A DNA stretch of 64,000 nt from the NCBI RefSeq assembly GCF_002113885.1, contig NW_018480069.1, positions 34,031 through 98,030 of the forward strand, given 5' to 3'. Source of the DNA: Mizuhopecten yessoensis (Eukaryota). Within the stretch, counting starts at the first letter, position 1. Every line of letters begins with the position of its first letter. Position numbers and translations under genes: made by a program. The notes beneath the pieces were generated by a model, which searched no databases, was not told the DNA's origin, and saw nothing but the letters and a program-made list of their open reading frames with translations. This document shows positions 13,474 to 61,414 of this stretch, piece by piece.

Positions 13474-16400
13474 ATGACAACGTCTACTTCTACAGTCTCA
13501 ACTCCTGGCGTGGGTCTTATATGGTGCAGTTTATTGCTGCTTTGGTCAGTTGTGGAGGCGCAGGTTGCTACATCTGGGTATGAACTGGCCATTGTTTGTC
13601 ACAAGGAAGGGCACCTTATCGAGGCTCTGGACCTCTACGTAACAAATACCCTGCTCAACCACTCACATGTTGACGAAACTGTAGAAAGGTATGGTAGTAT
13701 CAAACAACACAGTAGGACTAAACGTTACTGTAATATTGTTTTTTTCGTCTGATTGAGAGTGTTTTTATTCCAACTTGAAATCTAATCAATTTATAACTTA
13801 AGATATAATATAATGGTGTGATGACATTATGACGGAAACAGTTCAGTCATCGAAAACCTATCGACACTGCTATCAGGACAAAAATCCACATGTGACCTTT
13901 ACTCAATTAACAAAATGAAATATTTGTTGATGCCCTGCAACTGATCATTTCAAAATCTCCTATCAGTATCAATATGAAAAAATATTCTTTCAATCCTAGA
14001 TAAAAATAACTAAATAAATAAAGGAAATTATGCATTTTTTTATATATTTTTTTAGATTTCTTAAAAAAGTTAAGAAGGAGAGATCAGGGATTGATGACGT
14101 CACTGAATGGATTGGTCACCCTATTAATGCCTACTTCTTAGTCGAGAGAACAGCAAACGGTTGGAGGGAGGTCAAGCAGTGTATCGATTGCAGTACATGT
14201 ACATGTGTTCCTTCCGAGGCTTCTCTGGGTAAGACATTTGCAATCAGTCAATGTAATGGTGAGTTGTGCAGTAGTTGGCGTATATTCAGTCAAATTTACA
14301 TGGTTATCTGTTAATCTAACAGAAATGGATATACCAGAACTGTTTTGAAACAACTTCAATCGACAAGTTTGTAGATATGTCAGTCATTTACATGGACGTA
14401 CTGTACACGCAGATACAGTATAAACAAAGCAGCCTAATAATTTCCAGTTCCCTGCTACTGTATATGTAATTACCGGGTAACAGGTACATGTTTTGAATCA
14501 CTAGTAGACTGTGGAGGAGGTGAGGATTTTCAACACAAAGCGTGACAGACCCAATTAACACAGGTACTGTCCAGTTGTGTTCTGATAAATGTCAAATCAG
14601 CGACGAACTGCAAACGGCTCTATATGCACGTGTAATAATAATGTACCTTACAGTTTTATAATTTGATTTTTTTCAAACGTCTTCATGTAAATCTTTCCTT
14701 TGTTCATATTTTGCATCAGTTTTATCGATTGTTATTTCAAATACTGGTTTTGTTGACACTAAGCTCTTGTTGTTATTTATAAATGAATCCACTTTTTCTA
14801 TAATGTTCACGATCGATAGATTTATTTAGAAAAAAAGCATTCGCAATTGTTATGATTCGAGTTGACCTCACTATTATTTTCCTTTGATATATTGAAGCGA
14901 TGTTAATACTTCGACCAATATTGATGACTTATTGCAAACGTTTGATTCCATTTAAGATTTTCTGTCGTCATGGAAAAATATCATAGACGACGATGGCATT
15001 TGGACAAGAATTGATGACGTCAGTATTGCTGCAAATGGTCTAGGACGACTTCATCACACTTATGACTTGGATATCAAAACTCTAATGTCCGGAACCATTT
15101 CAAACAAAGGTACATCACCACTGACCACTTCAGATGTCCTCAATATAGCAAATTATCTGGAAGAAGAGTTTCAAGTTACATGGTATGAAGCCTTACTGGA
15201 GGTTGTTGACGTCACCGAGCTGGAGTCAGTTTTTTATAATTTGGCTATTGCCCACCACACGGTAAGGTTACCATACACGTTCGGATGATGTGCATGTACT
15301 GTATAGCGGTTATATTTCGCGGGGTTTTTAATTTCGCTATATTCGCGCTATGATTGATATCCGAGAATTCTAAACACCAGCGAAATTATCGAAAATGTTA
15401 ACCACTTTTAAGGCCCTTATCACAACATGTCGAAAATACTTTTAACCAAACGCTGTTATGCATAATTTAATGAACTCAAATAAGATTATCGCCGGACAAC
15501 TGGCAGTCAATGTAAAAACAACACTTACGTTTAAGTTGCCACAACATATTTATGTGTACACAGTAGGTGATTAATTGATTACAGTTTACTCCTACAAAGG
15601 TACATACACATTTGATTTTCTTTCGAGTGAAGTCACTGGCGGATGAGGACGCACGGAATCAGCGTTTTCAAACGGTTTAACTAAATTTCGAGGTTTAACC
15701 CTTAAATGATGACACTCAGAATATTTTGCACGACACATGGGATTTGGGTGGCGCATCGAATTTAATTCCCGCGAATATGTACTGAATACGAAACCGCAAA
15801 ATATGACCCCGCGAATTTAAAGCGCTATACAGTATGCAATTTGTAATTATATAATTTTAGATATTGTCTGACATGTTATAAATATAACATGCTTTCATGT
15901 CATTTCTTAGAATAGCACTTCACACAAAACACCAAGGAATTGTATTGTTCATAGCAAAAGTTATTAAATTATGTTGTTTTAGTAAATATTTAAAGTAAAT
16001 GAAAAAAAGAAACTTTTTGAACTTCTCTTCAATGCATATCAAAATTGAGATATTATTGCTAGATCTTTACTTCTATGAGCCGTTATTTGTTTTTACTTTT
16101 TGACATTTCCCCCCATTACTTCTATGGGCCATAATATATATATATACAACGTATATTTATATATTACTTTTAGACATTTCTTTCCATTATGTTTATGAAT
16201 CATGATATTTTTTTACTCTATGGATACAGGGAGGATTCTCATGGAAAGCACTGGATATTCTGACAGATTTACAGAAGACAAGTCAGTACTGACGAGTGAT
16301 GCTAAACCTGTTCTTGGAGTTACATACATTCTAATCCTCTACGAAAACAAGCAAACCTGAGAATATAGTTCATAAGGAAATGTTATCTATTAGCCAAATG

Positions 16401-19400
16401 TTTTAAATCTGCTATGTTTTCTGTATTTCTATATATGTTTAAGAAAACGTCAGACATGGGTTATCATTCTTTGGCATTTGATTTTTCTTATCACTGAAAA
16501 GTCCAAATAGAACGAACCGGTCATATAGTACAGAAACAAATGCTGTTTTGGTTATCTATAAAACTTTATTTTGATTTTACAAAATTTATGAAGCAAGTTA
16601 TATAATTCATTTTCATCACTCATTAGCACGCAGGAGGGTTTGATGAGGGAGGAAACCGGAGTAACCCGACAAAAAACCAAGTGGTCGGGTAGGCGACCCC
16701 ATCCTCGATACTGCAGGGGTTACGCTCACTGTCGCTCTCTGCACACCTGGAATATCGAAAGATTTAGTGTGTACCATCGGGAAGACTAGTGTGTTTCATT
16801 GATGTACATCAAAAGAATCCGTCGGTCGCTTAACGGTAACATTGACTGTCCTTCCTTTGCGATTGGATCTTCAAAGGACAGGTATCAGTCTAGCAATTGG
16901 TCAGGTATGTTGCACCTGAGACCAATCAAGTAGATTGCCACGTACCTTCAACTTTGATATGACATATTTCAGGGCTACAGCGAACGAAAGTGAGCTTAAC
17001 CCCTGGAATAACGAGGATGGGTGATCCCATACCTTTCAACCCCGATCGGGGAATCGAGCCGAGGCAGTATCGACAAACCAAATTATTGCTTTTAGATTAT
17101 ATCTAAAAGATGTAAACTGAGAGGAACGTGATCTATAAATTAACCACAGGGGCATAATCCAATCTAAGCTATCAACCTTGATGAAACTCTATGTGTTTAT
17201 ATACATGTACCACCAAAACCGTCAATTGGTTGCATATAATCTATATGACAGGTAAAAGGCCTATGGAAGATATGATTAAGACAATCAGACAAAAGGCCGA
17301 GACATCTGGAGAGGATGAACCCATAGTGACATGGTTTTCCAACATAAAGGATGCTTACCAGAAGCTGTGTCGGCAAAGTTTCGAGGTACTGAGTTGGGGT
17401 TATATAATATTCTGTTAGACCTCTTGTTGAAATGTTATATCCAACATGTCATTGAACACAGCTGAAAATACAGATTGATCTGTTAGACATAATCCATTTG
17501 CTAAACTAAACAAGAAATGTATGGCTACTCCGAGTCGAATCCAAAACTAACTAAACTATAACGCTTTGCTTTCAGACAAATCAAGTTGCACCCAACCTTC
17601 ATTGTTACAACAAGGTGACACGAATCCCCTACTACACAGGTAAAGAGGAGGTACTGAGCTACGTACCACGGATATCTAGGTTCCACGACGTCATATCAGA
17701 CGAAGAGATTTTACAACTACAGGATACCTGCAAACAGAACGTAAGTAACCACAGTTACTTTCGTGGCATGTTTAATGTTATGGGAATTTCTTTTGACTTA
17801 ATCTAAATGTCATTTTATTCGTTTACTGTAATATGTATTTGTAGATGAAGGTAGCAACTGTTATTGGAGCGGATGGAAAAAAAACCCAAAATCTTCACTA
17901 TAGAACTGGTGCAAGGTAAGTAGCACACAGACTAAGGTCGTATGTTTTTTTAATTCAATTCCCCGACCAACAAGTTTAGTGACTTCTTATTTTTGCCAGA
18001 TATTTATAGAAATTCACGTTGAAATTGTCGGACATATGCATGTGTGGATGTGAGTAAAACGGTTCCTGTTCCGATCTAACGCCAATCATAGGTTTTCGAA
18101 AAGGTGACGCCAACGTTCCACAATATGTCTGAATTTGCTTCAGCTTAGTTTGTAAGTGTATTATGACATTGCCAACTCCTTCAAATACATCATTAGCAAT
18201 TATGGACTGTTTGAGGACTTATTTAATGGTGTCCGCTTCAATTAAAGTTTGTTTTGCTATGGTTTTGTTTCACAAATATATGTATACGAAACATTTAAAT
18301 CTGCTCATACGGTCACCTTCATTACGTTTCCCATCGTGTGGTACACTGGCTTATGTTGTTGTTGTTTCAGTTAGAAGTTAACCTGTATAAGTCATTACCT
18401 ACATTAAGAGACAACCTTTTGAACTCCTCTAGGGGGTTCTATTAATGTAGGTTTGACTGTATATTATTGAAACTATTTTGTTGTAGAAACTTGCCATCAT
18501 ATATATTTAAAATGATTTTTTTACAAACCTTATGCTGTATAATATTATACTGATATTTTACAGGCATACAACTTTATGATATTATAACAAATATGATCTT
18601 TATGTTTTGTTTTAAACATTGATACTACATGTGTCTGTATATGTAATCAGATCGATCAGTTTGCTTTCCAGGTACGTGATGCATTTCCGTTACAAATCTG
18701 ATTATATATGGTTGTAAAAGTTTTCCTATACAAGCCTTGTAATGCTTAGTATTGTGACAATTTGAATGAGAAACTTGATGCTTTCTATGATTTTTATGTT
18801 TATTTTCAAATTTGGTTACTTTTTATGGTTCTCCCCTTCTTTTTTTTTTATCTAAACATGATAATTTTTATGGTTCTGATTAGTAATATTTTTGTTTGCG
18901 ACTTTCATCTCTTTTTAGAAAGGAAACAATTTATAATATTCACGCCTTGCTCATGATTTAAAGTATTAACCAATACTCTTATGATTTTTAAAATCAATAT
19001 TTTAAATAGATTTTACGCACTTCGCATTCTTTTTAAACAGTATATGAGACCAATTTCGAGTTTAACATTTTTTACCCATGGCAACATAGATGTGTCCTTG
19101 AAGGGGTGAAAAGCTGTTTGGTGCAGTTATAATTATATTTTGACATTTTGTATCTGTTTCTCCTTTACAAAAAGAAAAAAGAAAAAAACAAAGTGTCAAC
19201 AAAACCATAATTCGAACTCAGACTTGATAAAACAAAAAGAAAAGGACAAAAGACCATGTGGTCCGGAAGGGTAAGCGTATTCTGCTTAATGGACGAACCC
19301 ACCAATGGAAATATAGTACAGATCCAAGTAGTAATAACACGTCCTCAAATCGAGATCTCGAATAGCGACAACAAAATCACAATAGGCACTGCTTATCACA

Positions 19401-22400
19401 ATCAAAAACATTGACCTTCAAATTACACAAACATAAAACGCATTTCCCTATGCGACCAGATAACTTGTCCAAAATCTTCATCAACGTGCATCTTTGGAAA
19501 CCCTGTTTGTTATTTTTGTTCGTCATCAGCCGACATCTATCACGGGAGTCATGATATTCGGACCAAGCTCATGGATATCGTATAATAAGCCTGATGGTAA
19601 TGTTGTAAGCAATATCGATAAAAGCGATTGACGTGTTACGGTCTGTTATGTATTTCATTTCAAACCCGTGATTGTTTATTCATGATCTATTCCGTCACTA
19701 AATTTCCTGTCATTTTAATACAGCATATTGTCGATATGTCTGATTGTGAAATTGAAGAACTTGGCTAAGCCTCATAAAAAGTCATCAATAAATTTAGATT
19801 CATACGAAAACAAATACAAATCGGTCAGAAGATGGGCATAATTTGTTTTCATAGGAATTCCTACAGTCTGCTGGAAAGTCTTGTGACCGACCGCAATATA
19901 TTGTAAACAAGGAACTCCAATATTCTAACAATTTCGCCCACAGTATTTTTGATTTTGATCTTTGTTGTGCTTTTCACAAATTATGCTTATGATCTTACAG
20001 GGTCATTACATCAATATGGATGGTATTTGTCTTTTCTAAAACACAGTCCTAGATAGAATAGTGTGGTCAGAGAGGGTTGGAATGTTTATATAAAAATGTA
20101 TCTCCATGGTTCACTACAGAATGATGTCCATTCGTTCAATACCGCAAAACATGTCGTCATAGGTAATGCTGTTTCCAGTTCTGATATGTTGTTTACATAA
20201 CCTGAATCCGTACTTGATTCGGATGTTTTGTTTGAAACAATTCATTTCTGTGATGCACTTTTTACAAACTTGATACTTATAATACGGTACCTGCTTGTCA
20301 CCATTGTTGTAAGACATACTGTTGTATATTGATATGAGAGATTTGTTTTATAACATAATTGTTATGCATAGTTGTGATACATGTAAAATCCTCATGCATT
20401 ATATGTTTGGAGAGTATTTTCGTTTTGTTTGATTTACCTTTTCAAACTTAGTACTGCACATTGCTGTGTTGTTTGTTTGGCAAAACTGATGTTGAAAGTG
20501 TTTTTGTGAAATCTTTTTCAGTACCTGGGTGGAACCTAGGAAGAATATTTCTCTAAAACTAGAAAAACGAGTTGAACTTTTAACAGGACTCGATACATTC
20601 TATAGAAAGGAGGTTAACACGTCCCAATACTTCAATGTAAGAAATGATTTCTTTTTCTATTTATTGTATTATGCATGTATTATTTAACCACGTCTGAATA
20701 ACAAGTAATCGAGAGAAAAATACACGCATGTCGTATTACCATCCCCCGCATTCACCGAAACGAGGGTTTTCATTTGGGTTTGTCCGTCTGTCCGTCTGTT
20801 TGTCACGCTGCGAGTCCGTGCAATAACTGCAACAATTATTAACAGATTTTCTTCAAACTTGGTACCAGGGTTAAATGCCTTAAGTGCTCAAACAACTTAG
20901 ATGACCACTTTCAGCGGACTATATTTGGCGGAGTTATGGCCCATTGAATAACAAAAAACGTCATTATCTCCCGTTTCTGTTTATTAACTCTCGCAAATAT
21001 TATCTGATTGTCTTCTAACTTAGTAACAGGGTTCAACGTATTTTAGGGCTCGGCCAAGTCTGACAACCACTTTAATCGGACTCCATTTGTCGGAGTAATG
21101 GCCCCTTGATTAACGAAAAACTTCATTATCTGCAGTTTCGCTTAATAACTCTAGCAAATATTAGCCAAATTCCTTCAAACTTGATGAAATTGTTTCTCTT
21201 CCTCTGTCTTTACACCCATCTCGGGCACTCTTTGGATTTGGTGTGATATTTGCAGTAGATATTGTGCAGATATTTCAACCAAATTCCGTATGCACATCCA
21301 ACTCATGCTAAGTTTGCCAACCGATGTGATTAGTGCATATTTACTGATAATTAATGAGGTAAGTAAATTCTGATTATTAAACGATTGATTTACACCGTAA
21401 TACCTACATGTTCAATAAAAAGTCTAATTTCTGTATAAGGCTTTTTTCCCCTTCGAGTTGCAAGCTATACATTATGTCTCAACAGCACGATACTCACATG
21501 TTTAAACCTAAACCTGATAATGCTTACCTACAATATGTCCTGCTAGCGGGGGAAATACATTCCACGAATTTGCTTGTATTAACTTTGACATATGATGTTA
21601 ATAGCAAGTATTAAACCTGATATTAAGTAAAGATTTGTAGACTTATAAATTCAAATAAAAACATAATTGATATAATCGTTAAAAAGAAATAGTAAGTGTT
21701 TGTGAATCGATAGGATCTGAATTATAAACAAACAACCGAACGAACAAGTGTGGAAGAAATACTAATATCTTCAAGAATGGGACTATTCTGTGAAAATAAT
21801 ACGAAAAGGTACCGTAGAATACTAATTTGTTCACAAGGCAAACTCTGTCAAAGATAAGACTGTATGTATTCTGTCTTATGATTAGAACGATATAGTGTGC
21901 AACTACTAGTTAACCCGTATATTGCCGACAAATATGTTTATGTAAACTGGCAAACATTTTTGTTACTGATTTTGACTGCCGACACAAAACGTCACATTAT
22001 GTAAAATTGGTACGTCAAATTTGTTTTAATTACAGTCAACTAATAACTATGATTTTCAACGTTTTTAGTCAAAGGAAGACTATATATTGTAGAATAAAGA
22101 CTCCTTAAAAAGGGGGTCTGAATACAGTATTCCTCTCGAGGGTATCTGGAATTTGGGTTAAAACCCGTGACTGGGCCTTTAGTTCTGTTTTTAAGCCTCT
22201 AGAGCATCACAGGTTTTGAAATTCCAACCCCTGAACCAATAATGCAATAACCACAGTTGTTTTCTTAGATTGCGATCAAAACGACCGTTACTCGCCAAAT
22301 GTGTAGGGTTCTTATTCCTTCATACATATATTCTGTCACAGAAACTATGAATCTTGAGAGATATTGATCTAGCATACAAAGCATGATCGTACTTTTTGAT

Positions 22401-25400
22401 TCTGTTTTCCTACAGATATTTCTGAACAGTTTATATACGTATTCTTTTGAGCCGTAATTCATTGTAACCCTGATGAAAAAATGGTGCTTCAATTTTCGTA
22501 TTCCAAGTGATTATCTTGCGGCAAATGTCGGACAAGTTTGCTGATCGACTTTCGTTCCCCGATGTTGATTGTAACCATATCAGCAATGATATCCTGACAC
22601 CATCTAACGAGACCATTTGTTATGTCCAGATCAATGGTTTCAATATTGTAATGTCAACCAGTATTACAACACTTTTAAATGTTCCAAATAATAAAGAAAT
22701 ATCAGCTGATGTTCCGGATGGATGAACATTTCTTATAATGCTTTCGTTTTTAACTGTGTTTCAACATGTTCATGAGCATTTTAGATATAGATTATCTGAA
22801 ACACAGCGGAAAGGAAAAGTATACTAGAAAAGATTTTTTATGAGTACTACTTATGAGTTTACTCTGGTATTTTCATTGAAGTTCCTTATATTTTCTTTTA
22901 TTTGTTAATCAATTAATGTTTTTTATCTTAATATTTCTTTTGATTCTGTTGTTTTCTTCTTTGTAAATGATCACGATATATTTCTGATTTTGCTCTTCTG
23001 TTGACGCTAACTTATATAAAAATGTCTCTATTTTACTAAATATGAACTGTGAGAAATGGGATATGTATCATTTATATTTGCACATGCTTAACATTACATG
23101 ATATATAATATTAACCGACGTTTACATGTACTCAGATGGTGAACTACGGACTTGGGGGACATTATATCCCACACCTGGATGCAGTAAATGTGAGTATGTT
23201 TAAATGTTAACATTTCCGTGACAACACATAACATTTTGATTTTAGTCTAAACATCATTGATCGTGCATATTCCCTAAAAAACGTGTTCGTCGCTCCTGAT
23301 ATGTTTGTTCGATTTAATTCAAACAATAAAAGTACGGAACACTATCAATATTTGCAAAATTGATTGTAATGTTAATCATATATTCTGTTTCGATCACATA
23401 GAAGACATCGTGGTATTCTGCAATATGCCATTATTGAAGGCGTGGTTGTAGTCTGTATTTTGTCATGACCAACATAATCTATTTTATTTGAGTTAGAGTT
23501 ACCCCCTTGAGAATTATGAATTAAATGATATGCAGGCATGTGATCCTGTATATTTTTCATATGTGTCATTAATTAATTGAACATTTCCTTATTACTTACA
23601 AGATATCATTTTGTTTTTGCATTGTGGCAGTTCAAATTTAATCACAACATGGAAGCATGTTATTATGGTATCCCTAAATAATGCTGTGTAGCTAGGGGAA
23701 AACCGTACAGCTTGTTCAGATTTTTAGTGGTTTATCCCGATTATACTGTAGCAATTGGACTTTTCCTGCCGACATGAAAAGGAACCATTAACACGGATAT
23801 GTTGTACCGACAATACTCTATCAAACATTGTACCCGGCATACGTTATAAAGCTGAATTGTTGAATTCAATTACCATCCACGAATTAATGCTTTTGACAGT
23901 TTACATTCTAATAAGAGTTGTTTCAGTCCAGTCATCTATTATGCTCAGCCTGATACATGTAATAACTGTATATCTTTATGACATGTCATTATGGATTATA
24001 TTCACATGGATAATAGTTTGTGAACCTCTTTAATTGGACATAGATTGTGATAAAGCGGTATATGAGAACCTCAAATTATTATATATTTTTTTATTACTTA
24101 ACAGTCCCGAACATACAAAAAGGAAGGCTGGAACAATACTTTTGGAGACAGAATAGCTACCTGGATGTTTTATGTAAGTAATACCTAAACGGAATGGCAG
24201 GTTGATATAAAATAAAACACCACAGTTGAATTTATTTTTATCTGTTAAGCAATGTTAATATAGCAATGCACTGGTTAGTTAAAACAGGTATCCAATACCT
24301 GATCATATTATGACCCTAGCACTTTGCTAATTCGCAATAAAAATGAATATTTATCTTACCATTGACACAGTATTCATTGTAATGTTATGATTAAGTAACA
24401 ATGTTCATAACTCGTTTTCCAAAGTTTAAAATTCTGCTAACCTTGGTAAGATTTTGTCTTACTTACGAATACGGGTAGATGTAATGTACGTCATGACAAA
24501 AGAGAAAAGTAGGTCGTGTTCAGTGTTACTGGATCTATGCAGGATTATTATTACAAAACCAAAAATAAGAGTACAGAAAAAAAAAGTTTTTAGACGTTAC
24601 AAATTTGAGTTCGAATTTGACCTTCAGTATTGGCGCAATGGTACCATGTATTTGTTGTTTCTTTTTTATTGTGTTTGATTACGGATTTTGAATGTGTATT
24701 GACGATGTTGTTGTTATTTTCTCTTTTTCATTTTGATTTTCTAGTCAGCGCTTAACGATTGCTTATCTAACTATTAACTTTTTCATTAGCTTAACACAGT
24801 AGAAGCAGGGGGTGCAACTGTTTTCCCCATTCTCAATCTCAAGATATTCCCCATCAAAGTACGTATACTATTCTAAGTTAACTAAACAATTATTCATTTT
24901 GTTATCTGCATTTCACGTTTTGAAAGTTTCGATATAATGTCATTATTATATGCATATTTTATTAGCTGATATAGATACTGCAAACATATACGAAGAAGGA
25001 ACACGAAATAATGGGTTCTTCTTTTATGAAATATCTTATGACTTGGAAAATAAGACACCTGTACTACTACTTTTATAAGAAACCCCAGTACCAACACAAA
25101 CACAGTCAATAGTTAAAGTATAAAACTAAATTTTAGTTTATACTGGAAACAAGAAAATGGAGGTAGTCCGCAATAGTCCGTCTTTGCGTATTGCAGAGTT
25201 ATCTTCTCTTGAGAACAGGTATTGATTGTTACGTCATTTGTTTGTGAGAGTAACGTCATCAATTTTTGAGAAAACGACGTAATTTTCTCACACAAACCAA
25301 TGACGTAACAATCAATACCTGTTCTCAAGAGAAGATAACTCTGCAATACGCAAAGACGGAATATCGTTTTTCTAATTATTTTAGGGGTCGGCCGTGTTCT

Positions 25401-26168: not shown

Positions 26169-26285
26169 TTTATGTGATGAAATGAAACATTGTTATAATT
26201 TTGATTTATAGACAGAGGTAGAACTATGTTAACATCTAACAATACATTTCGTTCACATTTGTTGTAATTAATTATATATCCTATA

Positions 26286-26291
26286 AATAAA
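26286..26291 (+). terminator. Candidate polyadenylation signal of copy 1
   Basis: First AATAAA seen after the stop codon, about 120 nt downstream. The AT-rich context makes this weak evidence. Confidence 0.3.
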
Positions 26292-28837: not shown

Positions 28838-28988
28838 TCAAATGTAAAATACTGTATTATAACCCACAGAAAAATCAAATGTAAAATACTGTATTATAAC
28901 CCACAGAAAAATCAAATGTAAAATACTGTATTATAACCCACAGAAAAATCAAATGTAAAATACTGTATTATAACCCACAGAAAAATCA
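28838..28988. repeat. 37-bp perfect tandem repeat x4, upstream of copy 2
   Basis: Unit TCAAATGTAAAATACTGTATTATAACCCACAGAAAAA. Confidence 0.95.
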
Positions 28989-29222
28989 GGAGAAATAAAA
29001 CATGTTTAGCTCGTCTGTCAGCGCTGACACACATGTATACACATTAACGATTTCTCGTTGCTTTTCATTCAACCAGGAAAGTTTATACTTATTCCGCATC
29101 GCTCTAACATTGGAATATTTTAACATGTAACCACAAACTCAAATCTTGCCCGGAGTGACACAAGTAAGATGTATAACATACACGTCGCCATTTTGGAAAC
29201 AAATAACCGCTAAAAACTAGAC

Positions 29223-50752: not shown

Positions 50753-53700
50753 ATGGGATACACCTGGTGCGGCGTGCTGATGCTCCTAACAGCTGTAACG
50801 GCAGAAGTGGCAACATCCGGGTACAAACTGACCGTCGTTTGTCAAAAGGAAAGGCAACTAGTGGAAGCATTGGACCGCTACGTCACTATAACCTTGAGTA
50901 ACCAATCACATGTTGACGAAACTGTACAAAGGTATGTGGTACTACTCTAACGCTTTCAGGAATATATAGGTTTCAATAACTACGTAAATTGGATCTGAGA
51001 TATATATACCTATAACAAGAGTTACGCGTAATTATATGTCTCGCCGTTACCCGTTTTGTGTTTTCACAAACATTTTATGCTGATAGCATTTTCAAATAAA
51101 TTCCGTCAGAGAGGAGAACATCAAAACCATGTGGTAAGCTGCGAATACAGGTTTAACACTGGATTTAATGAGTTAGACCGCATTTTTATCGAAAAAAACA
51201 AAGTGGTACCGGTACATATATTCCGCTTTTATCACATGCATACATGAAACCTGTGATAGATACATTCATAGGTGTAGCTAATATGCACTGGTAAATATGT
51301 GCAATGAAATGTTTCTGAAAGTAAATATGCTTAATTACTGTAAATACTTAAGGTGTGTATAAAAAATATGACAATTACTGAATAAATGATGTCCAATTCT
51401 AAACTTCACCCAAAATCCTAAGTTTTCTTCCCAAGCATTTCAAATCTTTGTTTCTGACCCGCAATACTAATGGAGCCAAGCATTTCAAATCTCTGTTTCT
51501 GACCCGGAATGAGTTCTACACCGCATTACCTACTAAGCTAAAAACAAAAATTTAACATGAGCTGGCCAAAAACACAAAAATCCCCCCAAAAATTGATATG
51601 GTCATTTGAGCAAGAAACCTGTATTATATGTTGAGGTACTGTGTATACTGAAGGTGTGTATACAATTGGAAGCAAATCTGAAAATCATTTAAGAAATTAT
51701 GTCCAATTCTGAAAATCACCAAACAATTTATGTTTTCTGCCCAAAAAATTGTTGTGGTCATCTCAGCAAAAATTCCATATTACATGTTGAATTACTGTGT
51801 ATACTTCAGGTGTGTATGAAATTTCAAGTAAATCTAAAAATTATTAAAGAAGTTATGTCCAATTCTCAAAATCACCCAAAATTCTATGTTTTCTGCAAAA
51901 AAAATGTTAGGGTCATTTGAGCAAAATAAACCCGTATTTAAGCATTGAACTATTTTTGTATGGTATTAATGATCTATTTGAATGACACAGCTTTGCAAGC
52001 AAACAAATCATAATGCGCGCAGTTCAATACTGGTAATTCATATTTAAAATTAAAAATGCCCGCCTTATCGACAGTCCACACAATTATGTTCAATAGTTTG
52101 AACAGCGTATTGTCGCGTGCTGATTGGCAAACAAAGTAGTACTTTGAAATTTTAACAAACACTTCAATTTTATTCCACAATTCAGTATCAATACAATTGC
52201 GTATGATATGTTTATAGGTTGATTTAAGTTTATCAATAGAACTCTGAGCTGAAAGTAAGATTTGAAATTGTTTCGATTTTTCCCCGGAACAAATTTCGCG
52301 CATGAACAAATACAGTGAACACGGTAAATCCGACCTTGCCCTCCACGAGGGAGTTATTTTTGGAAGTTAATTCGAACTTTTCTCTTTGCTCATTTTGTGA
52401 AGAATCCAGGCGTGAATTTATTTGTTGATTGTACTACCTGACAACAGTCGGTAGATTCTATAACAGCCTCGTTATTTGACATGTCGTCATAAACTGAGGA
52501 ACCGTGGATGCGAGACGAGTGAAACTGATAGCGTTTGAAGTGAGTGATCTTGCGACGGAGCACAGGTTCGTTACAAATGTCTGAAATGTTTATGTGTGCT
52601 GTGACTCATATCAGTAGGTCTGTAACATATGTGTCAGTAGGTCTATAGAATATGTGTATTTCAGACATTTGTAACAAACCCCTGTTGATCAGTGCAGTGT
52701 AACAGACGTTATTTATGATAAATTGCATGAGCGTTAAAATTGTTTCCATTGCCGGCATTGGTGATTTCAACCGACGTGCATTTTGTACGATATTGCAGAC
52801 CTTGGTCTTGTTTTCGTTGTAATAAAAGTGTTTTTCATTAAAAAAAATATTTTGCACATAAATTTACAATGACCTTGTCAATTCTCACAATGCCCAGCTA
52901 TATTTCAGCAGCCGTGATGTTTATTTATATTGGATATTGTAGTTCCGGTCAGTGTTGTATTAATACGCTAAGAATTGTGTCTCGTGATACATGGTAATTA
53001 AAATTCCATCAACGACACAGCTTTCAAAGAGGCTATATAGTGACAATGCCATGCAAATGTCAATATTATATGTTGAAGTACTGTATATACTGAAGGTGTG
53101 TAAATAATTGCAAGCAAATCTGACAATTATCAAAGACGTTATGTCCAATTCTCAAAATCACCCAAAATTCTGTTTTCTGCCAAAAAAATTGTTGTGGAAA
53201 TCTCAGCAAAAACACGTAGTATGCATTAGAGTACTGTGTATACTAAAGGTGTGTATGCAATTTGAAGTTAATCTTAAAATTATTAAAGAAGTAATGTCCA
53301 ATTCTCAAAATCACCCAAAATTCTATGTTTTTGGCCCAAAATAGGTAAAAAAATAAGATAAAAAAATGAAACAAAATTACCCCACTTTGACTTCATATTA
53401 TAAAAGGTAGACTCCTTCATGCAAAATTTCAACACCATAATATCCCATTATTAACTGATAAAGAAACCTATAACGTAAACATAACGTTGTGAGAATCGCA
53501 ATGTTTGACGCCTTCGCCGTCGACGTCGACAGAAAAGCAATATAGGATACTTATAAAACTGATAGGTAGTCTTGTTGTAAATAAAAGGTTTCTAAGAGAT
53601 GTCAAGGAGGAGAGATCTAGAATTGACGTCATCGCAGAATGGATTGGTCATCCCATAAATGCATTTCACCTGGTTGAGCGAACAGTTAACGGATGGAGGG

Positions 53701-56700
53701 AGGTCCAACAGAACATCAACTGTATTACCTGTGTATCTACCACAGCAACACAGGGTAGGTATTTCTACAAGAGGCAATCATCAGTCATTCGATAGACTAC
53801 AACTATATGATAATTACGATATTCAATATTGAGGTTGTAATAAATTTAGGAAATTGAACGCAAAAGCCGTTTTAAAAAGGATTCATCAGCACCCTTTTTG
53901 GCAAGTAATAACGCATACATTACGGTGTGATATGGTATAACCTATAGCGAAGCAGGTCAAATATTAATTTACATTGTTGATAGTCTTTTATGTTATTAAT
54001 GTTCAGGATACGGGGGTTGGGTGGGGGATTACATACATACTAAAATATATTAACAGCCCTCCCTTCTACAGCTTTGTAAACGTTGACTGCATTTAAATAG
54101 CGTTTACACAATGAAAAAATGGTCGGCGGATTGATACCTATTTCAAATATGGCACCGTTCTCGCTTCAGCGTTATAACTGTTCGATGACAGCCATTGTTT
54201 GGTTACTATAACATCTGGAAACATATTCGGGATCCATTATGTCTGATTTTTCAACAAAGGGATGCTGCCAAACTTTTAATTCCATTCAAAATTCTTTGAC
54301 GGTAAAGTAAAAAAGGCGGCTTCTTTTTGCGACGTTTTACCGCGTCACTGCCACAGAAGTGTGTCAATGCGTGTATATAACGACCGTAATAAATGAATAA
54401 AAATGTTCGAAGTGCTGTTTATATTACTAGATTAACCATTTAAAAGCGACGAAGGAGAAGAAAATTAGTGTTGTTCACTGCGTATATTCTATATTTACCC
54501 ATATATTGATGTAGATTCACTGGAACTATAGTATCCTAGCAACCACGGCTACCGTAGTTACCATCGTAGCGACCCGCTTCGACTTGTTTTTCCTTTGTAT
54601 ACCATTTGAATATTATTTATGATGTAAATATAAGTATTTTTATTTAACTTAATAAATAACCTTAAAAAGCCGTACACATACATTGCTATACATATAGTGT
54701 CTTGTTTTAATATGGCATTCCTATTTGAAAGGAACTACAGGCATGAGGAATGTTTTGTGATAGAGAACGTTCGAGTTGTCTTTGGGTATTTTTTCTCACA
54801 CGCACACATTTGACGTCATTGTAAATATAAGGCAGTGCACTGCATCTGCATATCACAGCACAATCGACTGTTCATTGCTTTTGTGTATATAACTAAACAC
54901 ATACATAAAAAATAGATATGGTATTCCCGCTAAAAAGATATTGAACTTTAGGGTTTGCCCAGTCAGTACTGATTACTCTAATGTAAACAACGAACCATGC
55001 ACCATGATGGCGAGCTATTTTTTTTAAATGTTACAGTATGTTTGTTTTATTTTTCATTTTACATCGCTAAATTTGCTTTCATGAATTGGAAATTGTCAGT
55101 ATTTGCAATTGTTTCAGAATTCCACACGGCCTGGAAAGGTATTATAGAAGAAGATGGTATATGGTCCAGCAGTGATGACGTCATTACTGCTGCAAAGGGT
55201 CTGGGAAGGCTTTATGCAACGTATGACTTGGATATAAAAAAAATGATATCTGGAACGATATTAAACACAAGCACATCACCATTGACAACGCCAGATGTAA
55301 TCAAGATAGCAAACTATTTGGAGATAAAGGATCAGATTAAATGGTATGAAGCATTCCTCGAGCTGCTAGGTGACGTCACCAAGAATGAGTCTATATTATA
55401 CAAGCTGGCTATTGCTTATCACTTGGTAAGTTAAACGTGGTTACGGAATTTAGCGGAACTGTGAATAAATATCGATATTACAGAAATTGCATATATACAT
55501 AAATGTATTCTGCAGTACATTCGTTTAGGGAGTGAACAGTAGGTTTGTGATTTTCCTACAAGTTTTAATGCAAACAATTATCAAACAATATTTGACATAC
55601 TGAATATTAATGGGGTTTTTCTTCAAAAAGATATGACATTTTCAAAATTACCAAAAAGTCATCCTGATTTCGGCCTTATTCCTTTTTCAGTTTAATATCA
55701 CATCATTTTTACCATCACGAAAGTCTAAAAACATAAAAATAACATGTGAAGTGTCACTTACCATGACCTCACAAGAGAAATAAGATGACGTCATAAATCC
55801 TTAGTAGTTGCAACACTGAAGGTTTTCTTTAAAAAAGTAAACTGTGTTAGTGTAATAGCAAATTGTGCAGTTTAACGTTTTGAGTATTAGATAAAATGGA
55901 CCTCAATATTTTTCCAATAAGATCTGATTTTTATATAATTTGCTGAAATATGTTTCGCATATATCATATGCAATGCGAATCAGTTGAGAGCCTCTATACA
56001 TATATAAGAAAATAGGCAAATGCATTGAAATGGATGAGATATTGATTACATCCCTCAGTGATAATAATGTGGCAGAAAGTAAAACACCTAAATGATTGTA
56101 TGAGATCAATAGGGTTATTCATTTAAATGTAGTTTATTTTTTTTACAATCACGACCACTTTGTCCACACAGGGAGGTATGTCGAGTAAAGCGTTGGGTAT
56201 TCTTACAGAATTACAGGCAACAAGTAAGTGATCTTATGAAGTGTTTTACACAAGTATTAGCATCCACCCTTTCTCTAAGCAGTATTGGGTGTAATGTTTG
56301 GTAGCCAAACGTGGTGTAAAGATACCAATACCATATTCTAAACGAGTTTCTCCTCCTTCTAAATCTATGCAGCTTAATATTCACTACGCAAGAAAAATAT
56401 TTCAAGTTCCAGTTTTGCAGTTACCTTCTTATCTAATTTGTGTACGTCTAGATAAATTAAGAAAAGGCTTGATTAATACATATTGTATATCTTATAAGAA
56501 ATAGAATAGAAATACCATAACTAAATAGTACAGCAACCAGATTAAAAGTGGCAAGCAGCACGAGACTCCATTATTACATTTAGGAAGCATTACGTCAAAC
56601 CATTGAACTCTGTGTAACAAAGGTACCCGGTCGATGGATACAATGATTAAGAACATCAGGAAGAAGGCCGAAATGATTGAAGAGGATATACCGCAAAAGA

Positions 56701-59700
56701 AGATAGAAACAGTTGATGACATACACAACTCTTATCAGCAGCTTTGTCAGGGAAACATACAGGTACGTGAATACACAACTCCTACCGGCTGTTGTGTCAG
56801 AGAAACATACAGATACTGACATACACAACGCCTACCGGCTGTTGTGTCAGAGAAACATACAAGTACGTGTATACACAACTCCTACCGGCTGTTGTGTCAG
56901 AGAAACATACAGGTACGTGTATACACAGCTCCTACCGGCTGTTGTGTCAGAGAAACATACAGGTACTGACATACACAACGTCTAGCGGCAGTTGTGTCAG
57001 AGAAACATACAGGTACGTGTATACACAGCTCCTACCGGCAGTTGTGTCAGAGAAACATACAGGTCCGTATTTATTTTACTGGTGACTCCGTAGATGTGTG
57101 GTTTACAAACTGGGTGTTACATAAATAGTCGTCACTAATTGATGAATCACTTCGGCATCAATTAACGGGTCAATGAACCATGCTAATGTCGTTTGTACCT
57201 GTAAGGTCAGTCTTCCATAAGAGTCACAGTGCATATGTGCTTCAATTAAAGAACTTGAAGGTCGTTTGCAACAAACACAATTGTTTTTGAATGCTTTAAA
57301 ATAAATCGCTTAAGATTATGAGAAGGTTAAATCAATAGATAAATGTAATGTACTGGGAGCATTTATCATTTAGCCAGAGTTGTGGACTTCTCGGTAGAAG
57401 ATTGTAAGCTATTCAACAACTTGGCCGATACCCTCCCATAGCACCGATTTCGGTAACTAACAGTGCGAGATTTTGGGACACACGACAAGGATTCTGTCTC
57501 CTACCGCAGTGCTCGTGATGGCTGATACATGGTAACAAGCTCCTGTCAATACTGGGGAGCTTTTCCTTCAGCGGCTTATATGTGTATACCAAAGATTTGT
57601 ACTGCGACCTGTATCCTACCGGTAACCAGTGTAAATAACATAGCGCTGGTGTGAGTTGCTCTCTCTTTCATGTACAGCTATGTAAGGTAAATATATATAA
57701 ATAATTAGATACACAACGCCTACATGCAACTGTGTAGTGGAAATATATAGGTACTTACGTGTACAAACGGGTCCTTCTAGGTTTCATCGGGAAAGCTAGG
57801 GGCGAAAAGTTAATCTGAATTGTCTAAACTTCTGTCATGAATTGATAAACTTATAGGAGTGCTGGTTTATTTCAAATTAAATAATATGTACAAGTTAAGT
57901 GTGTATATTGTCCACCATGCCATTACCAAAAAGAGATAACCATGACCATCACTATTAAGCCAATACGTTGCTGTAAACAGTTTGCAACAATATATGGTTT
58001 CTATCATATCCAAATATATCATAGTATTTGCATTATCATTGTGATACTTGTACTTTATGGTAACAGTTAATTAGTTTATGTGATAACATGTCAGATTCTA
58101 GAAACATAGCTCTTCAAAGGCAACGCATGAAGCGCTTAAATTAGTACACTGACGTTTTTTTTAGCTCACCTGGTCCGAAGGACTATATATATATATATAG
58201 TGAGCTTATGCCGTGGCGCAGCGCCTGTCGTCCGTCGTCAACTTTTTCTTTAAAACCTATCTCCTCCTTAACGCCAAAGAGGATTTCAACCAAATTTAGT
58301 CTGAAGTATAACTAGGAGAGGGCAATCATTTCTTAAATAAATGAGGTTGGTTCGACCCCTGGGTCGAGGGGGGCGGGTCTCTGAAGGGGAACGTAGCTAA
58401 TTTTTCTTTAAAACGCATCTCCACCTAAACGCCAGAGAAGATTTCAACCAAATTTGCTCTGAAACTTCATTGGGGGAGAGCAATCATTTCCTAAATAGAT
58501 GAGGCTGGTTCGACACCTGGGGCTAGGAAGACCGGGCCCCAAACAGGAAAATTATCTAATATTTTGCTTTAAGACTCTAATACCCCATAATTGCCTGAGT
58601 GGATTGTACAAAATTTGGTCAAAAACGTTATTGAGGAAGAACAAACATTTCTTAATTGAATGAGGTTGATTTGACCCCTGCGGTCCTATGAAATGGTACA
58701 GCTAGATTATCATATTCTATGGTGTAGTTTTCATAAATTGTTAAAAATTGGTTTCTAGGTTTATAAAAGTAAAAGCTTATAGTTGAATGAAAATTAGGGT
58801 ATTGTCTAATTACAACCTGTAATATGACATATTACTTATTTCAAAATCTGTTAACATGGCAACTCAATGGAGGCCCCTGATTAGTTGAAAGTCAGATAGT
58901 GTGGTCCCAGTTGGGTTAGAACATAGACCTTGTCTGGTTTTGAGGAAATTTCATATACAAATTTACTAATGCATTCAGTTGTACAGTGTAATGACTTAAA
59001 TATAAAACCAGGTGAGCGATACAGGTCCAAAGGACCTCTTGTTATTTGACACAATATTAATATTATATGGGTCGGTTTTCAAATGAGTTACTTTTTCAAC
59101 CTTGTAAATTATTCATGTAAATGATATAAGCAATGCACAAAATCCAATAAAGTGTTGTCTATTCAGACAACACAACCTTATGGTACAATTCAAAGTTATT
59201 TTTCACATGATCTTTATGCTATATTTTCTGATCTAAACACAAACATAACTATATTGTTAAACTCATTTTAAAAACAGGCGGTAAATGTTACACCCGTCCT
59301 CCATTGTTACAACAAGGTGACACGAATTCCCTTCTATACGGTTAAAGAAGAGGTACTGAGCGATGTTCCCAGGATTTCCAGGTTCCACGACGTCATTTCA
59401 GACGCAGATATTTCACAACTGCAGGATATTACCAAGCCAAACGTAGATATGTTGATGCTTCTTTCTTTTTGTCACTGTTATCTAATTATGATCTTAAGAG
59501 TGAGTTGCTTTGCGCATTTGTTTACATTTTACAATACATTGTCCACAATCCTTTTAATTCCTCTACAATTTATATTCTTTATTATTTTACAACAACTATG
59601 AAACAAGTTTTCACAACTTATATTAATCATTCTTGTTGGGCGGGATGTTAGAGCGCGGGGGGTCTTAATGTGGGAGTTGACCGGAGTAAAACCCACGTGG

Positions 59701-61414
59701 TCAGTCAGGTGACCCCATACGTTTCCACGTCAGATCGGGGAATTGAATCCCGGCCGCTTGGTGAAAGGCTAGTGCGCTATCCACTGCGCCATCCAACCAC
59801 AAGCTACAAACTTCTTTTGTCGTTCGTTGTTTATGTAAGTCTTCCGATTCATAACAAACAGATATATGGAAGAATTTAAAGGATTCCGATAATCCCGTCT
59901 ATTATAGTGTGCGATCATTATTTTCAAATTACGTTCGATAAATTGAAAATGTTTTCACCATACAAATCTCATACTCATGTGCATCAAAACCTGATAAAGA
60001 ACTGTTTTATTACAAATTTATTAATGATTGTTCCATTTTGGTTTTAGCTTACTCGAGCCAAAGTCTTTACCGATGGCATCGCTACAGCTATTGACAACAG
60101 GATTGGTGAAACGTAAGAACATTTATTGACCGATCAAAATGAATGAAAAACACATCAACCGTAATCATCGATAATTACCCTGAAAAACATGGCGTTACTT
60201 ACCATTACCGGATGTGAACATCGTGACTGTATGTGATTTCAAGTAGTTATGATGTTGTCGTTATGATGTTCTCGTTATGATGTTGCCTATGATGTTGTCT
60301 ATGATGTTGTCTATGATGTTGTCTATGATGTTATCTTTATGATGTTGTCGTAATGATGTTGTCGTTATGATGTTGTCGTTATGATGTTGTCGTTATGATG
60401 TTGTCTATGATGTTGTCGTTATGATGTTTTCTATGATGTTGTCGTTATTATGTTGTCGTAATGATGTTGTCGTTATAATGTTGTCGTTGTGATGTTGTCG
60501 TTATGATGTTGTCGTTATGATGTTCTCGTTATGATGTTGCCTATGATGTTGTCTATGATGTTGTCTATGATGTTGTCTATGATGTTGTCGTAATGATGTT
60601 GCCGTTATGATGTTGTCGTTATGATGTTGTCGTTATGATGTTGTCTATGATGTTGTCGTTATGATGTTTTCTATGATGTTGTCGTTATGATGTTGTCGTT
60701 ATGATGTTGTCGTTATAATGTTGTCGTTGTGATGTTGTCGTTATGATGTTGTCGTTGTGATATTGTCGTTATGATGTTGTCGTTATAATGTTGTCGTTAT
60801 GATGTTGTCGTTATGATGTTGTCGTTTTGTCGTTATGATGTTGTCGTTATGATGTTGTTATGATGTTGTCTATGATGTTGTGTATGATGTTGTCTATGAT
60901 GTTGTCGTTATTATGTTGTTTATGATGTTGTCGTTATGATGTTGTCGTTATGATGTTGCCTATGATGTTGTCGTTATGATGTTGTCGTGTATGATTTTGT
61001 CGTTATGATGTTGTCGTTGTGATGTTGTCATTATGATGTTGTCGTTGTGATGTTGTCGTTATGATGTTGTCGTTATGATGTTGTCGTTTTGTCATTATGA
61101 TGTTGTCGTTATGATGTTGTCTATGATGTTGTCTATGATGTTGTCGTTATGATGTTGTCGTTGCCCGAACTGTTAGATTTACGTACAGTTTAGTTATACA
61201 CCTTAACCAAGGAAGGATACCTAAATAAGCATGCACTTGTATTTATCTATAAAAACACATTTTCGTGTTTTCCTTTCTATTTTCTACATTTGGAAACAGT
61301 GCGTTTGTGTCAAACACAATGGAAATTTGCTTGAAAATGGAAAAGAGGATAGAACTTATAACAGGACTGGATACGATCTTTCGAAAGGAAGTGAAAACAA
61401 CAGAAAAATTCCAG
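50753..61414 (+). CDS. P4HA: Prolyl 4-hydroxylase alpha-subunit-like, copy 3 (5' part, exons 1-8; remaining catalytic exons expected beyond the window)
   Basis: Exons: 50753-50931, 53588-53754, 55118-55425, 56172-56223, 56623-56762, 59278-59442, 60048-60112, 61300-61414. In frame with the same phases as copies 1 and 2. Motifs GHPINAF, GLGRLYATYDLD, YQQLCQG, PRISRFHDVISD, RIELITGLD. The HxD exon was not seen before base 64000. Confidence 0.9.
51340..53345. repeat. ~155-bp satellite-like repeat array split by an ~1-kb unrelated segment (intron 1 of copy 3)
   Basis: ATGTCCAATTCT..AAAATCACCCAAA units at about 51389, 51699, 51855, 53141 and 53294, with intervening GTACTGTGTATACTGAAGGTGTGTA. Confidence 0.75.
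56721..57064 (+). repeat. 50-bp tandem repeat spanning the exon-5 splice donor of copy 3
   Basis: Unit GTACGTGT-ATACACAACTCCTACCGGCTGTTGTGTCAGAGAAACATACAG; six copies follow the exon end at 56762. Confidence 0.95.
58155..59043 (+). mobile_element. Non-autonomous Helentron (HINE/DINE-1-like) element
   Basis: Starts TTTTTAGCTCACCTGG and carries a GTCC/GTC microsatellite and about three internal ~160-bp repeats (GATTTCAACCAAATTT). It ends with the subterminal IR CCAGGTGAGC, a short hairpin AGGTCC-AAA-GGACCT, then CTTGTT. Confidence 0.8.
59652..59797 (-). mobile_element. tRNA-derived SINE with V-domain-like core
   Basis: The minus strand shows an A box (TGGCGCAGTGG) and a B-box-like GGATTCAATTCC, followed by GTGGGTTTT..ACTCCGGT..CTCCCAC. 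A related copy lies at 16631-17065. Confidence 0.75.
60246..61163. repeat. 12/14-bp minisatellite (TATGATGTTGTC / TTATGATGTTGTCG)
   Basis: About 920 bp of mixed 12- and 14-bp units in intron 7 of copy 3. Confidence 0.95.

What the first reader, a model, noticed from the sequence alone, without database searches (positions are those of the whole stretch)
13474..61414. Tandem array of three strongly diverged P4H-alpha paralogues: a candidate lineage-specific proline-hydroxylation system
Seen: three same-strand genes with identical intron positions and phases. Frames stay open across all exons despite heavy amino-acid divergence and unrelated introns, and exon-length differences are all multiples of 3. 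Established: collagen P4H alpha subunits are ER-lumenal Fe(II)/2-oxoglutarate dioxygenases that assemble with PDI. Inference: this is an old expansion kept by selection. Its members share derived changes (see the PSB, His501 and CxxC findings), so they may modify non-canonical secreted substrates such as adhesive, shell or other matrix proteins rather than ordinary collagen.
Basis: partly seen in the sequence, partly recalled or inferred. Interest (0 to 1): 0.8.

Follow-up and report, generated by a model that had tools for sequence, protein, structure and literature searches.

The report
Scallop-only tandem prolyl-hydroxylase gene array
The window holds part of a conserved tandem array of intact but diverged prolyl 4-hydroxylase alpha-like genes found only in scallops, separate from the animal's ordinary collagen enzyme; this kind of expansion is already known in flies, and the array's substrates are unknown.

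Summary
The genome is Mizuhopecten yessoensis. The three same-strand genes are real: copy A is at 13474-26168 and copy B at 29223-44633. Copy C starts at 50753, and only its exons 1-8 of 13 (my labels E1-E7, which include E6b) lie in the window.

The array also has a fourth intact copy 28 kb upstream and a truncated relic downstream. More fragments lie on another scaffold.

All four intact copies have 13 coding exons, AG/GT sites, identical phases and open frames of 516-532 aa. Nucleotide similarity between copies is confined to exons.

- **Selection:** pairwise dN/dS is 0.14-0.28.
- **Catalytic residues:** the Fe/2OG residues and both disulfides are kept.
- **Phylogeny:** the proteins form a clade found only in Pectinidae (100/100 support, stem 0.9). 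Copies 0, B and C have orthologues in Ylistrum, Pecten or Argopecten. Gene order is conserved in Ylistrum and Pecten.
- **Canonical enzyme:** a canonical collagen P4HA sits elsewhere in the genome (scaffold C772).

The "derived" PSB, His501 and CxxC states are shared by the whole molluscan divergent P4HA-like radiation, so they are not special to this array.

Expression evidence is thin: one spliced contig, and no reads in two RNA runs. NCBI already names these genes, mostly as truncated models.

Verdict: this is a new member of a known kind, like the Drosophila P4H-alpha clusters. The substrate hypothesis is untested.

The parts
13474..13688 (+). copy A exon 1 (ATG, signal peptide)
   Evidence: prefix of XP_021343228.1
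14056..14228 (+). copy A exon 2 (P4Ha_N)
   Evidence: Pfam PF08336 E 6.6e-6; spliced RNA contig joins 14227 to 14956
14957..15261 (+). copy A exon 3 (end of N domain, start of PSB-like domain)
16230..16281 (+). copy A exon 4
   Evidence: weak donor GTCAGT; NCBI model reads through here
17252..17385 (+). copy A exon 5 (linker)
17576..17740 (+). copy A exon 6 (start of catalytic domain)
17845..17915 (+). copy A exon 6b (seventh exon, 71 nt)
20522..20636 (+). copy A exon 7
23136..23189 (+). copy A exon 8 (His-x-Asp iron ligands)
24105..24173 (+). copy A exon 9
24790..24858 (+). copy A exon 10
25385..25481 (+). copy A exon 11 (second iron His, 2OG-binding Lys)
26089..26168 (+). copy A exon 12 (Leu at the His501 position; stop TGA)
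29223..29404 (+). copy B exon 1
31424..31587 (+). copy B exon 2 (P4Ha_N)
32652..32956 (+). copy B exon 3
   Evidence: XP_021343226.1 starts inside it
33828..33879 (+). copy B exon 4
34507..34649 (+). copy B exon 5
36143..36298 (+). copy B exon 6
36568..36638 (+). copy B exon 6b
37047..37161 (+). copy B exon 7
38331..38384 (+). copy B exon 8 (His-x-Asp)
38707..38775 (+). copy B exon 9
42904..42972 (+). copy B exon 10, preceded by a 33-bp x 4.7 array of its acceptor (42762-42917)
43963..44059 (+). copy B exon 11
44554..44633 (+). copy B exon 12 (stop TAA)
   Evidence: XP_021343226.1 is an exact suffix of the model
50753..50931 (+). copy C exon 1
53588..53754 (+). copy C exon 2 (P4Ha_N)
   Evidence: Pfam E 8.8e-7
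55118..55425 (+). copy C exon 3
56172..56223 (+). copy C exon 4
56623..56762 (+). copy C exon 5; its 3' end and donor are repeated as a 50-bp x 7 array (56721-57068)
59278..59442 (+). copy C exon 6
60048..60112 (+). copy C exon 6b (65 nt)
61300..61414 (+). copy C exon 7, the last one in the window; E8-E12 lie at window-equivalent 65346-78156 (L005-L006)
60713..64000 (.). window part of a 5,110-bp block that recurs at 99.5% identity head-to-tail across a single N (contig 94743-99852 and 99854-104963). It duplicates E7-E8 of copy C and is probably a haplotype assembly artefact.

Best explanation
The window covers the middle of a tandem, same-strand array of prolyl 4-hydroxylase alpha-like genes in Mizuhopecten yessoensis. 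The array holds four intact copies (0, A, B, C), one truncated relic (D), and further fragments on another scaffold.

The array is a subfamily found only in scallops (Pectinidae). It sits inside a larger molluscan radiation of divergent P4HA-like genes and is distinct from the animal's canonical collagen P4HA.

Shown:
- Each intact copy encodes about 520 aa with a cleavable-looking signal peptide and the N (dimerisation), PSB-like helical, linker and double-stranded beta-helix catalytic layout.
- The Fe(II) ligands (His-x-Asp...His), the 2-oxoglutarate-binding Lys and both conserved disulfide pairs are intact.
- The copies arose before the scallop genera split, and they have been kept under purifying selection.

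Inferred:
- They are active ER-lumenal Fe(II)/2-oxoglutarate prolyl 4-hydroxylases, probably held in the ER as complexes with PDI.
- Each copy is specialised by tissue and/or substrate, because a canonical enzyme exists for ordinary collagen and the tyrosine-lined collagen-peptide groove is not conserved.
- Their substrates are unknown. They could be non-collagen Pro-rich secreted proteins or specialised collagens.
- Expression is low or restricted.
For: - Gene structure: 13 exons, all AG/GT, identical phases, open frames of 516-532 aa. Similarity is exon-only.
- Model check: the copy 0 model equals XP_021343267.1, and the others match NCBI's partial models.
- Family assignment: P4Ha_N on exons 2-3; PF08336 plus PF13640 on the orthologues.
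- Structure: AF2 model of orthologue P0002 has pLDDT 82.9, and its catalytic domain matches human C-P4H-II alpha 7ZSC_A at TM 0.86. The N+PSB part matches 4BT8/4BT9.
- Catalytic and structural residues: His412, Asp414, His483, Lys493, Cys276, Cys293, Cys486 and Cys511 are all conserved.
- Selection: dN/dS 0.14-0.28 overall; catalytic domain 0.15-0.22, PSB 0.21-0.38.
- Clade: 100/100 support, stem 0.9, with orthologues of copies 0, B and C in Ylistrum, Pecten or Argopecten. Gene order is conserved in Ylistrum and Pecten.
- Rarity: only 4 representatives out of 1.84 billion reach E<1e-10 for the exon-3 profile.
- Canonical P4HA: it lies on C772, has up to 84% exon identity to hamster P4HA1 (59% to shark P4HA1 over the 293 compared columns), keeps the PSB tyrosines and His501, and groups with vertebrates at 99/97.
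- Transcription: a spliced RNA contig joins E2 to E3 of copy A at the predicted sites.
Against: - No enzymatic data exist.
- Two raw RNA-seq runs, of which 18-24% was read, put no read on any exon of copy A, and the one spliced contig has depth 2.2. Expression of copies B and C was not examined.
- Three of the four NCBI models are truncated, so no full-length transcript is documented for A, B or C.
- dS is near saturation (0.9-1.9), so omega is approximate.
- His501, reported as important for human C-P4H, is Leu or Arg here.
Confidence: 0.7

Rival explanations
1. The copies are redundant or tissue-partitioned collagen prolyl 4-hydroxylase isoenzymes. They still act on X-Pro-Gly repeats of scallop collagens and differ mainly in regulation.
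For: The full N-PSB-L-CAT layout and all catalytic residues are kept. The PSB-like region is under purifying selection (omega 0.21-0.38). In Drosophila, some non-canonical P4H-alpha-related enzymes hydroxylate collagen peptides in vitro (PMC12340787).
Against: The tyrosines that line the collagen-peptide groove in human P4HA1 are all replaced or deleted, and the PSB region carries two deletions. A canonical P4HA that keeps these residues exists on C772.
Confidence: 0.25
2. The array is largely silent and decaying: old duplicates that merely look intact.
For: There are no exon reads in two RNA runs. NCBI models are truncated for A, B and C. Copy D and the fragments on C5352 are clearly broken. 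Tandem arrays of splice-site sequence sit at several exon borders.
Against: Four open frames of 516-532 codons survive at about 40% amino-acid divergence with no stop or frameshift. Omega is 0.14-0.28, and catalytic residues are invariant. Orthologues with the same structure are kept in three other genera. One spliced transcript fragment exists.
Confidence: 0.07
3. The copies are non-catalytic P4HA-like proteins (pseudoenzymes). They would bind PDI or Pro-rich clients as chaperones without hydroxylating them.
For: His501 is replaced and the PSB groove is altered.
Against: The iron triad, the 2OG-binding Lys and the residues around them are the most conserved parts of the proteins, and the catalytic domain has the lowest omega.
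Confidence: 0.05

Closest known systems
Collagen prolyl 4-hydroxylase alpha subunits (vertebrate P4HA1/2/3; EC 1.14.11.2)
   Same: - Pfam P4Ha_N plus a 2OG-Fe(II) oxygenase domain, in the N-PSB-linker-CAT order.
- Iron triad, 2OG-binding Lys and both disulfide pairs.
- Signal peptide.
- The catalytic fold matches 7ZSC_A at TM 0.86.
   Different: - About 30% identity to vertebrate P4HA1.
- Outside the canonical clade, which contains the scallop's own C772 gene.
- The PSB tyrosines 158, 193, 196, 230 and 233 are not conserved, and the PSB region has two deletions.
- His501 is Leu or Arg.
- A CxxC insert in the N domain (absent in copy 0).
- No hit to the PSB Pfam model PF23558.
Drosophila P4H-alpha-related genes (26 genes; the 99F8-9 tandem cluster and the accessory-gland set; PMC12340787; Abrams & Andrew 2002 as cited there)
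   Same: A lineage-specific expansion of full-length N-PSB-L-CAT genes lies outside the clade of the one canonical collagen enzyme. The genes are partly arranged in tandem, and non-collagen substrates have been proposed for them.
   Different: This is an independent expansion in scallops with about five linked copies. Tissue specificity is documented in flies and unknown here.
Other divergent molluscan P4HA-like genes (for example M. yessoensis XP_021347256.1 and XP_021354092.1, and mussel and octopus "P4HA1-like" proteins)
   Same: They share the loss of the PSB tyrosines and the CxxC insert. Most also share the loss of His501. They lie on the same side of the tree relative to canonical P4HA.
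   Different: Identity to the array is only 30-35%. The array clade has the longest stem (0.9), extra PSB deletions, a conserved C-terminal x-E-H-F ending, and members only in Pectinidae.

Membership tests
Collagen-type prolyl 4-hydroxylase alpha subunit | N-terminal P4Ha_N domain (PF08336) | tested here: met
   Exon 2 of copies A and C scores above the Pfam cut-off, and exon 3 matches the end of the model. PF08336 is precomputed on orthologues P0002, P0034 and P0035.
Collagen-type prolyl 4-hydroxylase alpha subunit | C-terminal 2OG-Fe(II) oxygenase domain with a double-stranded beta-helix fold | tested here: met
   PF13640 is found on the orthologues and on NCBI's copy-B model. The AF2 model of P0002 matches 7ZSC_A at TM 0.86 and rmsd 2.7, and also matches algal and bacterial P4Hs.
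Collagen-type prolyl 4-hydroxylase alpha subunit | Fe(II) ligands His412, Asp414 and His483, plus the 2OG-binding Lys493 (human mature numbering) | tested here: met
   All are present in copies 0, A, B and C and in the scallop orthologues. Copy D has Arg at position 412.
Collagen-type prolyl 4-hydroxylase alpha subunit | Intrachain disulfide cysteines 276/293 and 486/511 | tested here: met
   Conserved in all four copies.
Collagen-type prolyl 4-hydroxylase alpha subunit | Peptide-substrate-binding TPR domain with a tyrosine-lined groove (Tyr158, 193, 196, 230, 233). The residue list comes from my own knowledge of the P4HA1 PSB structures. | tested here: not met
   The helical domain is predicted with high confidence, but none of the five tyrosines aligns. 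There are two deletions and no PF23558 hit. The alignment at 30% identity is uncertain.
Collagen-type prolyl 4-hydroxylase alpha subunit | Auxiliary His501 | tested here: not met
   Leu in copies 0, A and B, and Arg in copy C. It is also Arg in most other divergent bivalve P4HA-like proteins compared here. His is kept in the canonical C772 gene.
Collagen-type prolyl 4-hydroxylase alpha subunit | Orthology with canonical P4HA1/2/3 | tested here: not met
   The canonical clade (vertebrates, Anopheles, scallop C772) is split off at 100/100, and the array lies elsewhere.
Collagen-type prolyl 4-hydroxylase alpha subunit | ER signal peptide | tested here: inconclusive
   By inspection only. There is a hydrophobic N-terminus followed by a small residue at -1 and V or I at -3 before a conserved (E/Q)V. 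No predictor was available.
Collagen-type prolyl 4-hydroxylase alpha subunit | alpha2-beta2 assembly with PDI, and hydroxylation of X-Pro-Gly | not testable with these tools
   Needs co-expression and an enzyme assay.
Lineage-specific P4H-alpha-related tandem clusters (Drosophila type) | Several full-length N-PSB-L-CAT paralogues in tandem, outside the canonical clade | tested here: met
Lineage-specific P4H-alpha-related tandem clusters (Drosophila type) | Tissue-restricted expression of individual copies | tested here: inconclusive
   One spliced contig in run X3 and none in X16 or X18, with tissues not known.

The most novel reading that the evidence does not exclude
The scallop-only subfamily could be a dedicated modification system. 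Each copy, with PDI, would hydroxylate prolines in a scallop-specific secreted product such as byssal, ligament or adhesive proteins, or gamete or reproductive proteins (as proposed for the fly accessory-gland set). It would recognise its substrate through a remodelled PSB groove that no longer reads collagen X-Pro-Gly.
Probability: 0.3. Interest if true: 0.6.

Novelty: new member of a known kind. Interest (0 to 1): 0.4.

Why it matters
This work gives scallops a defined set of candidate enzymes for non-collagen proline hydroxylation, a modification that matters in bivalve adhesive and structural proteins. It shows that a canonical collagen P4HA coexists with a large divergent radiation in molluscs, in parallel with the independent expansion in Drosophila. 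It also supplies full-length 13-exon models for three genes that public annotation truncates, and it flags assembly problems at the locus. The substrate question can be tested directly by co-expression with PDI and by tissue RNA-seq.

Tried and rejected
- Catalytic exons searched alone against Pfam gave nothing, and PDB hits were weak (E about 0.1-0.2), because the exons are short.
- My first score scan missed exon 6b in copies 0 and C, which briefly suggested frame-broken genes. NCBI's models located it.
- The mixture-model tree was killed by the memory limit, so LG+G4 was used instead.
- I first concluded that all molluscan P4HAs lack the PSB tyrosines and that none is "canonical". I withdrew this after a genome search with hamster P4HA1 found the canonical gene on C772.
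- Run X1 covers intron as well as exon at low depth, so it was not counted as expression.
- Reading the three genes as haplotype or assembly duplicates was rejected. They are about 60% identical in protein, and each of copies 0, B and C has an orthologue elsewhere.
- Literature searches found no paper on these scallop genes.
- Rfam and tRNA scans of the window were empty.
- The joined spliced proteins were built and analysed only in local scripts from the stored files. They were not sent to any search, fold or look-up tool. Searches used single exons by reference or database orthologues, and the fold used Ylistrum P0002.
Full report
**What is there.** Translating every stop-to-stop frame of the window and comparing them all against all gave clean triplets of similar + strand frames in three blocks. 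Exons 2 and 3 of the blocks match Pfam P4Ha_N. Single exons give weak but correct hits to human P4HA1 (N/PSB) and P4HA2 (catalytic) crystal chains.

The window is G000:C76742:34031-98030 of a 988-Mb assembly. An exact match of NCBI protein XP_021343228.1 identifies the genome as Mizuhopecten yessoensis.

**Gene models.** I fetched the flanks of the contig and aligned each exon group as DNA. Similarity stops exactly at shared AG and GT dinucleotides. A phase conflict between exons 6 and 7 revealed a short extra exon (E6b, 62-71 nt). It was found in copies A and B by intron-against-intron comparison and in the other copies through NCBI's partial models.

The final models have 13 coding exons, all AG/GT, with phases 2,1,0,1,0,0,2,0,0,0,0,1 in every copy.
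- Copy A: window 13474-26168, 532 aa.
- Copy B: window 29223-44633, 518 aa.
- Copy C: window 50753 onward, 520 aa. E7 ends at 61414, and E8-E12 lie outside the window.
- Copy 0: contig 5018-20142, upstream of the window, 516 aa.

All exon-length differences are multiples of 3. blastn between the genes hits exons only.

My copy 0 model is identical to XP_021343267.1. XP_021343226.1 is an exact suffix of copy B. XP_021343228.1 and XP_021343230.1 are prefixes of A and C that then read into introns. So the genes are already annotated as "prolyl 4-hydroxylase subunit alpha-1-like", but three of the four models are truncated.

The joined proteins were built and used only in local scripts. Searches were done exon by exon or with database orthologues.

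**Extent of the array.** Downstream, copy D (contig 120034-126311) keeps only E6 and E8-E12. Its frame is open for 178 codons, but it lacks E1-E5 and E6b-E7 and has Arg in place of the first iron-binding His. I read it as a relic.

Scaffold C5352 carries E1-E6 on one strand and E9-E12 on the other. No further copy lies within the next 30 kb of the contig.

A 5,110-bp block with E7-E8 of copy C recurs head-to-tail at 99.5% identity across a single N. This looks like a haplotype assembly artefact rather than biology.

**Relatives and history.** A profile of exon 3 was searched against 1.84 billion cluster representatives. It found only four proteins below 1e-10, all from scallops.

A word search with the full-length Ylistrum balloti orthologue P0002 showed a sharp break. 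Proteins at 48-80% identity come only from Ylistrum, Pecten maximus, Argopecten irradians and M. yessoensis. Everything else is at 35% or less.

In maximum-likelihood trees the array plus these proteins form one clade at 100/100, on the longest internal stem (0.9 changes per site). Inside it:
- copy 0 pairs with Ylistrum P0035;
- copy B pairs with Pecten P0034 and Ylistrum P0002;
- copy C pairs with Pecten P0040, Ylistrum P0003 and Argopecten P0039;
- copy A has no orthologue in the sample.

The genomic order 0-B-C in Ylistrum and (upstream gene)-B-C in Pecten, on one strand and with the same exon series, matches the scallop window. The duplications therefore predate the split of these genera.

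**Selection.** Pairwise dN/dS among the four intact copies is 0.14-0.28, with dN about 0.26 and dS 0.9-1.9, which is near saturation. By domain it is 0.14-0.43 (N), 0.21-0.38 (PSB-like), 0.37-0.57 (linker) and 0.15-0.22 (catalytic). Four frames of 516-532 codons that stay open at 40% protein divergence point the same way.

**Not the canonical enzyme.** A genome search with hamster P4HA1 found a canonical gene on scaffold C772. Its exons are 52-84% identical to the mammalian protein, and the PSB tyrosines and His501 are in place. A partial protein read from those matches groups with vertebrate P4HA1 at 99/97, and with Anopheles at 100/100, away from all other molluscan sequences.

The array thus belongs to a large divergent molluscan (perhaps lophotrochozoan) P4HA-like radiation. 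Every member of that radiation is about 30% identical to vertebrate P4HA1.

**Residues.**
- The iron triad, the 2OG-binding Lys and the four disulfide cysteines are conserved in all intact copies.
- The five PSB tyrosines are not, and the region has two deletions.
- His501 is Leu in copies 0, A and B, and Arg in copy C.
- A CxxC insert sits in the N domain of copies A, B and C, but not copy 0.

All of these states except the extra PSB deletions also occur in the other divergent molluscan proteins. His501 itself survives in some of them. So they are old features of the radiation, not signatures of this array.

An AlphaFold model of P0002 (pLDDT 82.9) keeps the coiled-coil N domain, a helical PSB-like domain and a catalytic domain. 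The catalytic domain superposes on human C-P4H-II alpha at TM 0.86.

**Expression.**
- No run on record as RNA holds the copy A stretch in the index.
- In one small run (X3), a contig joins 14227 to 14956 with GT..AG ends, exactly the predicted E2-E3 junction, at depth 2.2.
- Two raw RNA-seq runs gave no read on any copy A exon, only on intronic repeats.
- Run X1 also covers intron, so it is uninformative.

Copy A is therefore transcribed and spliced somewhere, but at a low level or in tissues not sampled.

**Comparison with what is known.** Drosophila has 26 P4H-alpha-related genes. Twenty-five have the N-PSB-L-CAT layout, and one (PH4alphaEFB) is canonical. There is a tandem cluster at 99F8-9, and a distant accessory-gland set has been proposed to act on Sex Peptide (PMC12340787). 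The scallop array is the same kind of thing, arisen independently.

I found no paper on the scallop genes. A green-mussel study lists P4H-like genes among foot-expressed candidates for byssal protein modification (PMC7971044).

**Verdict.** The "derived changes" argument is weakened. The substrate idea remains an untested hypothesis. Interest is moderate.

Noticed in passing
L002:6509-7458 (contig C76742:16509-17458); L001:146-3149 (- strand); scaffold C5352:69-24224 (L016, L015, L009): A satellite of about 53 bp is derived from the 3' part of exon 8 (the His-x-Asp motif) and its donor. It fills intron 8 of copy 0 and the start of the contig in inverse orientation. It also spans more than 14 kb at the start of scaffold C5352, where exons E9-E12 follow it. 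This suggests the two scaffolds are neighbours.
   Followed up: partly
window 42762-42917 and 56721-57068: Tandem arrays are made of splice-junction sequence. One is 33 bp x 4.7 and carries the acceptor and first bases of copy B exon 10. The other is 50 bp x 7 and carries the last bases and donor of copy C exon 5. With the exon-8 satellite, that makes three exon borders in this family that have been amplified.
   Followed up: partly
L007:2004-8281 (contig C76742:120034-126311): Copy D is a truncated relic with only E6 and E8-E12. Its frame is still open for 178 codons. The first iron-binding His is replaced by Arg, and a conserved Trp in the last exon by Leu.
   Followed up: yes
scaffold C772:29245-85858 (- strand; L021-L027): This is the canonical collagen P4HA of the scallop. 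Two neighbouring alternative-looking versions exist for the PSB exon (84318-84476 and 85685-85858) and for the exon equivalent to E6b (50627-50695 and 50745-50816). They may be mutually exclusive exons. Much of the scaffold reads N.
   Followed up: partly
scaffold C5352:52840-69913 (- strand) and 25471-29378 (+ strand): Further fragments of the same subfamily lie here: E1-E6 on one strand and E9-E12 on the other, convergent. This could be a broken gene, an inversion or a misassembly.
   Followed up: partly
L003:1585-1635 (contig C76742:21585-21635): A near-identical copy of exon 9 of copy 0, with its flanking intron, lies 1.4 kb past the gene's stop codon. It carries an in-frame stop.
   Followed up: no
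window 7317-8204 (- strand): A 295-aa open frame is predicted to be coiled-coil, with only sub-threshold Pfam hits (ATG16, 25 bits). It lies between copy 0 and copy A.
   Followed up: no
window 15204-15871 and 16540-17040: Repeats in introns 3 and 4 of copy A draw high depth from all four runs, through reads that match only in part. These are dispersed repeat families, not expression of the gene.
   Followed up: no
window 63014-63403 (- strand): A reverse-transcriptase fragment (RVT_1, below cut-off) lies in intron 7 of copy C.
   Followed up: no
window 39061-39909, 45491-45943, 60246-61162: Long simple tandem arrays: 31 bp x 27 lies in intron 9 of copy B, 28 bp x 16 lies in the spacer between copies B and C, and 14 bp x 69 lies in intron 6b of copy C.
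   Followed up: no
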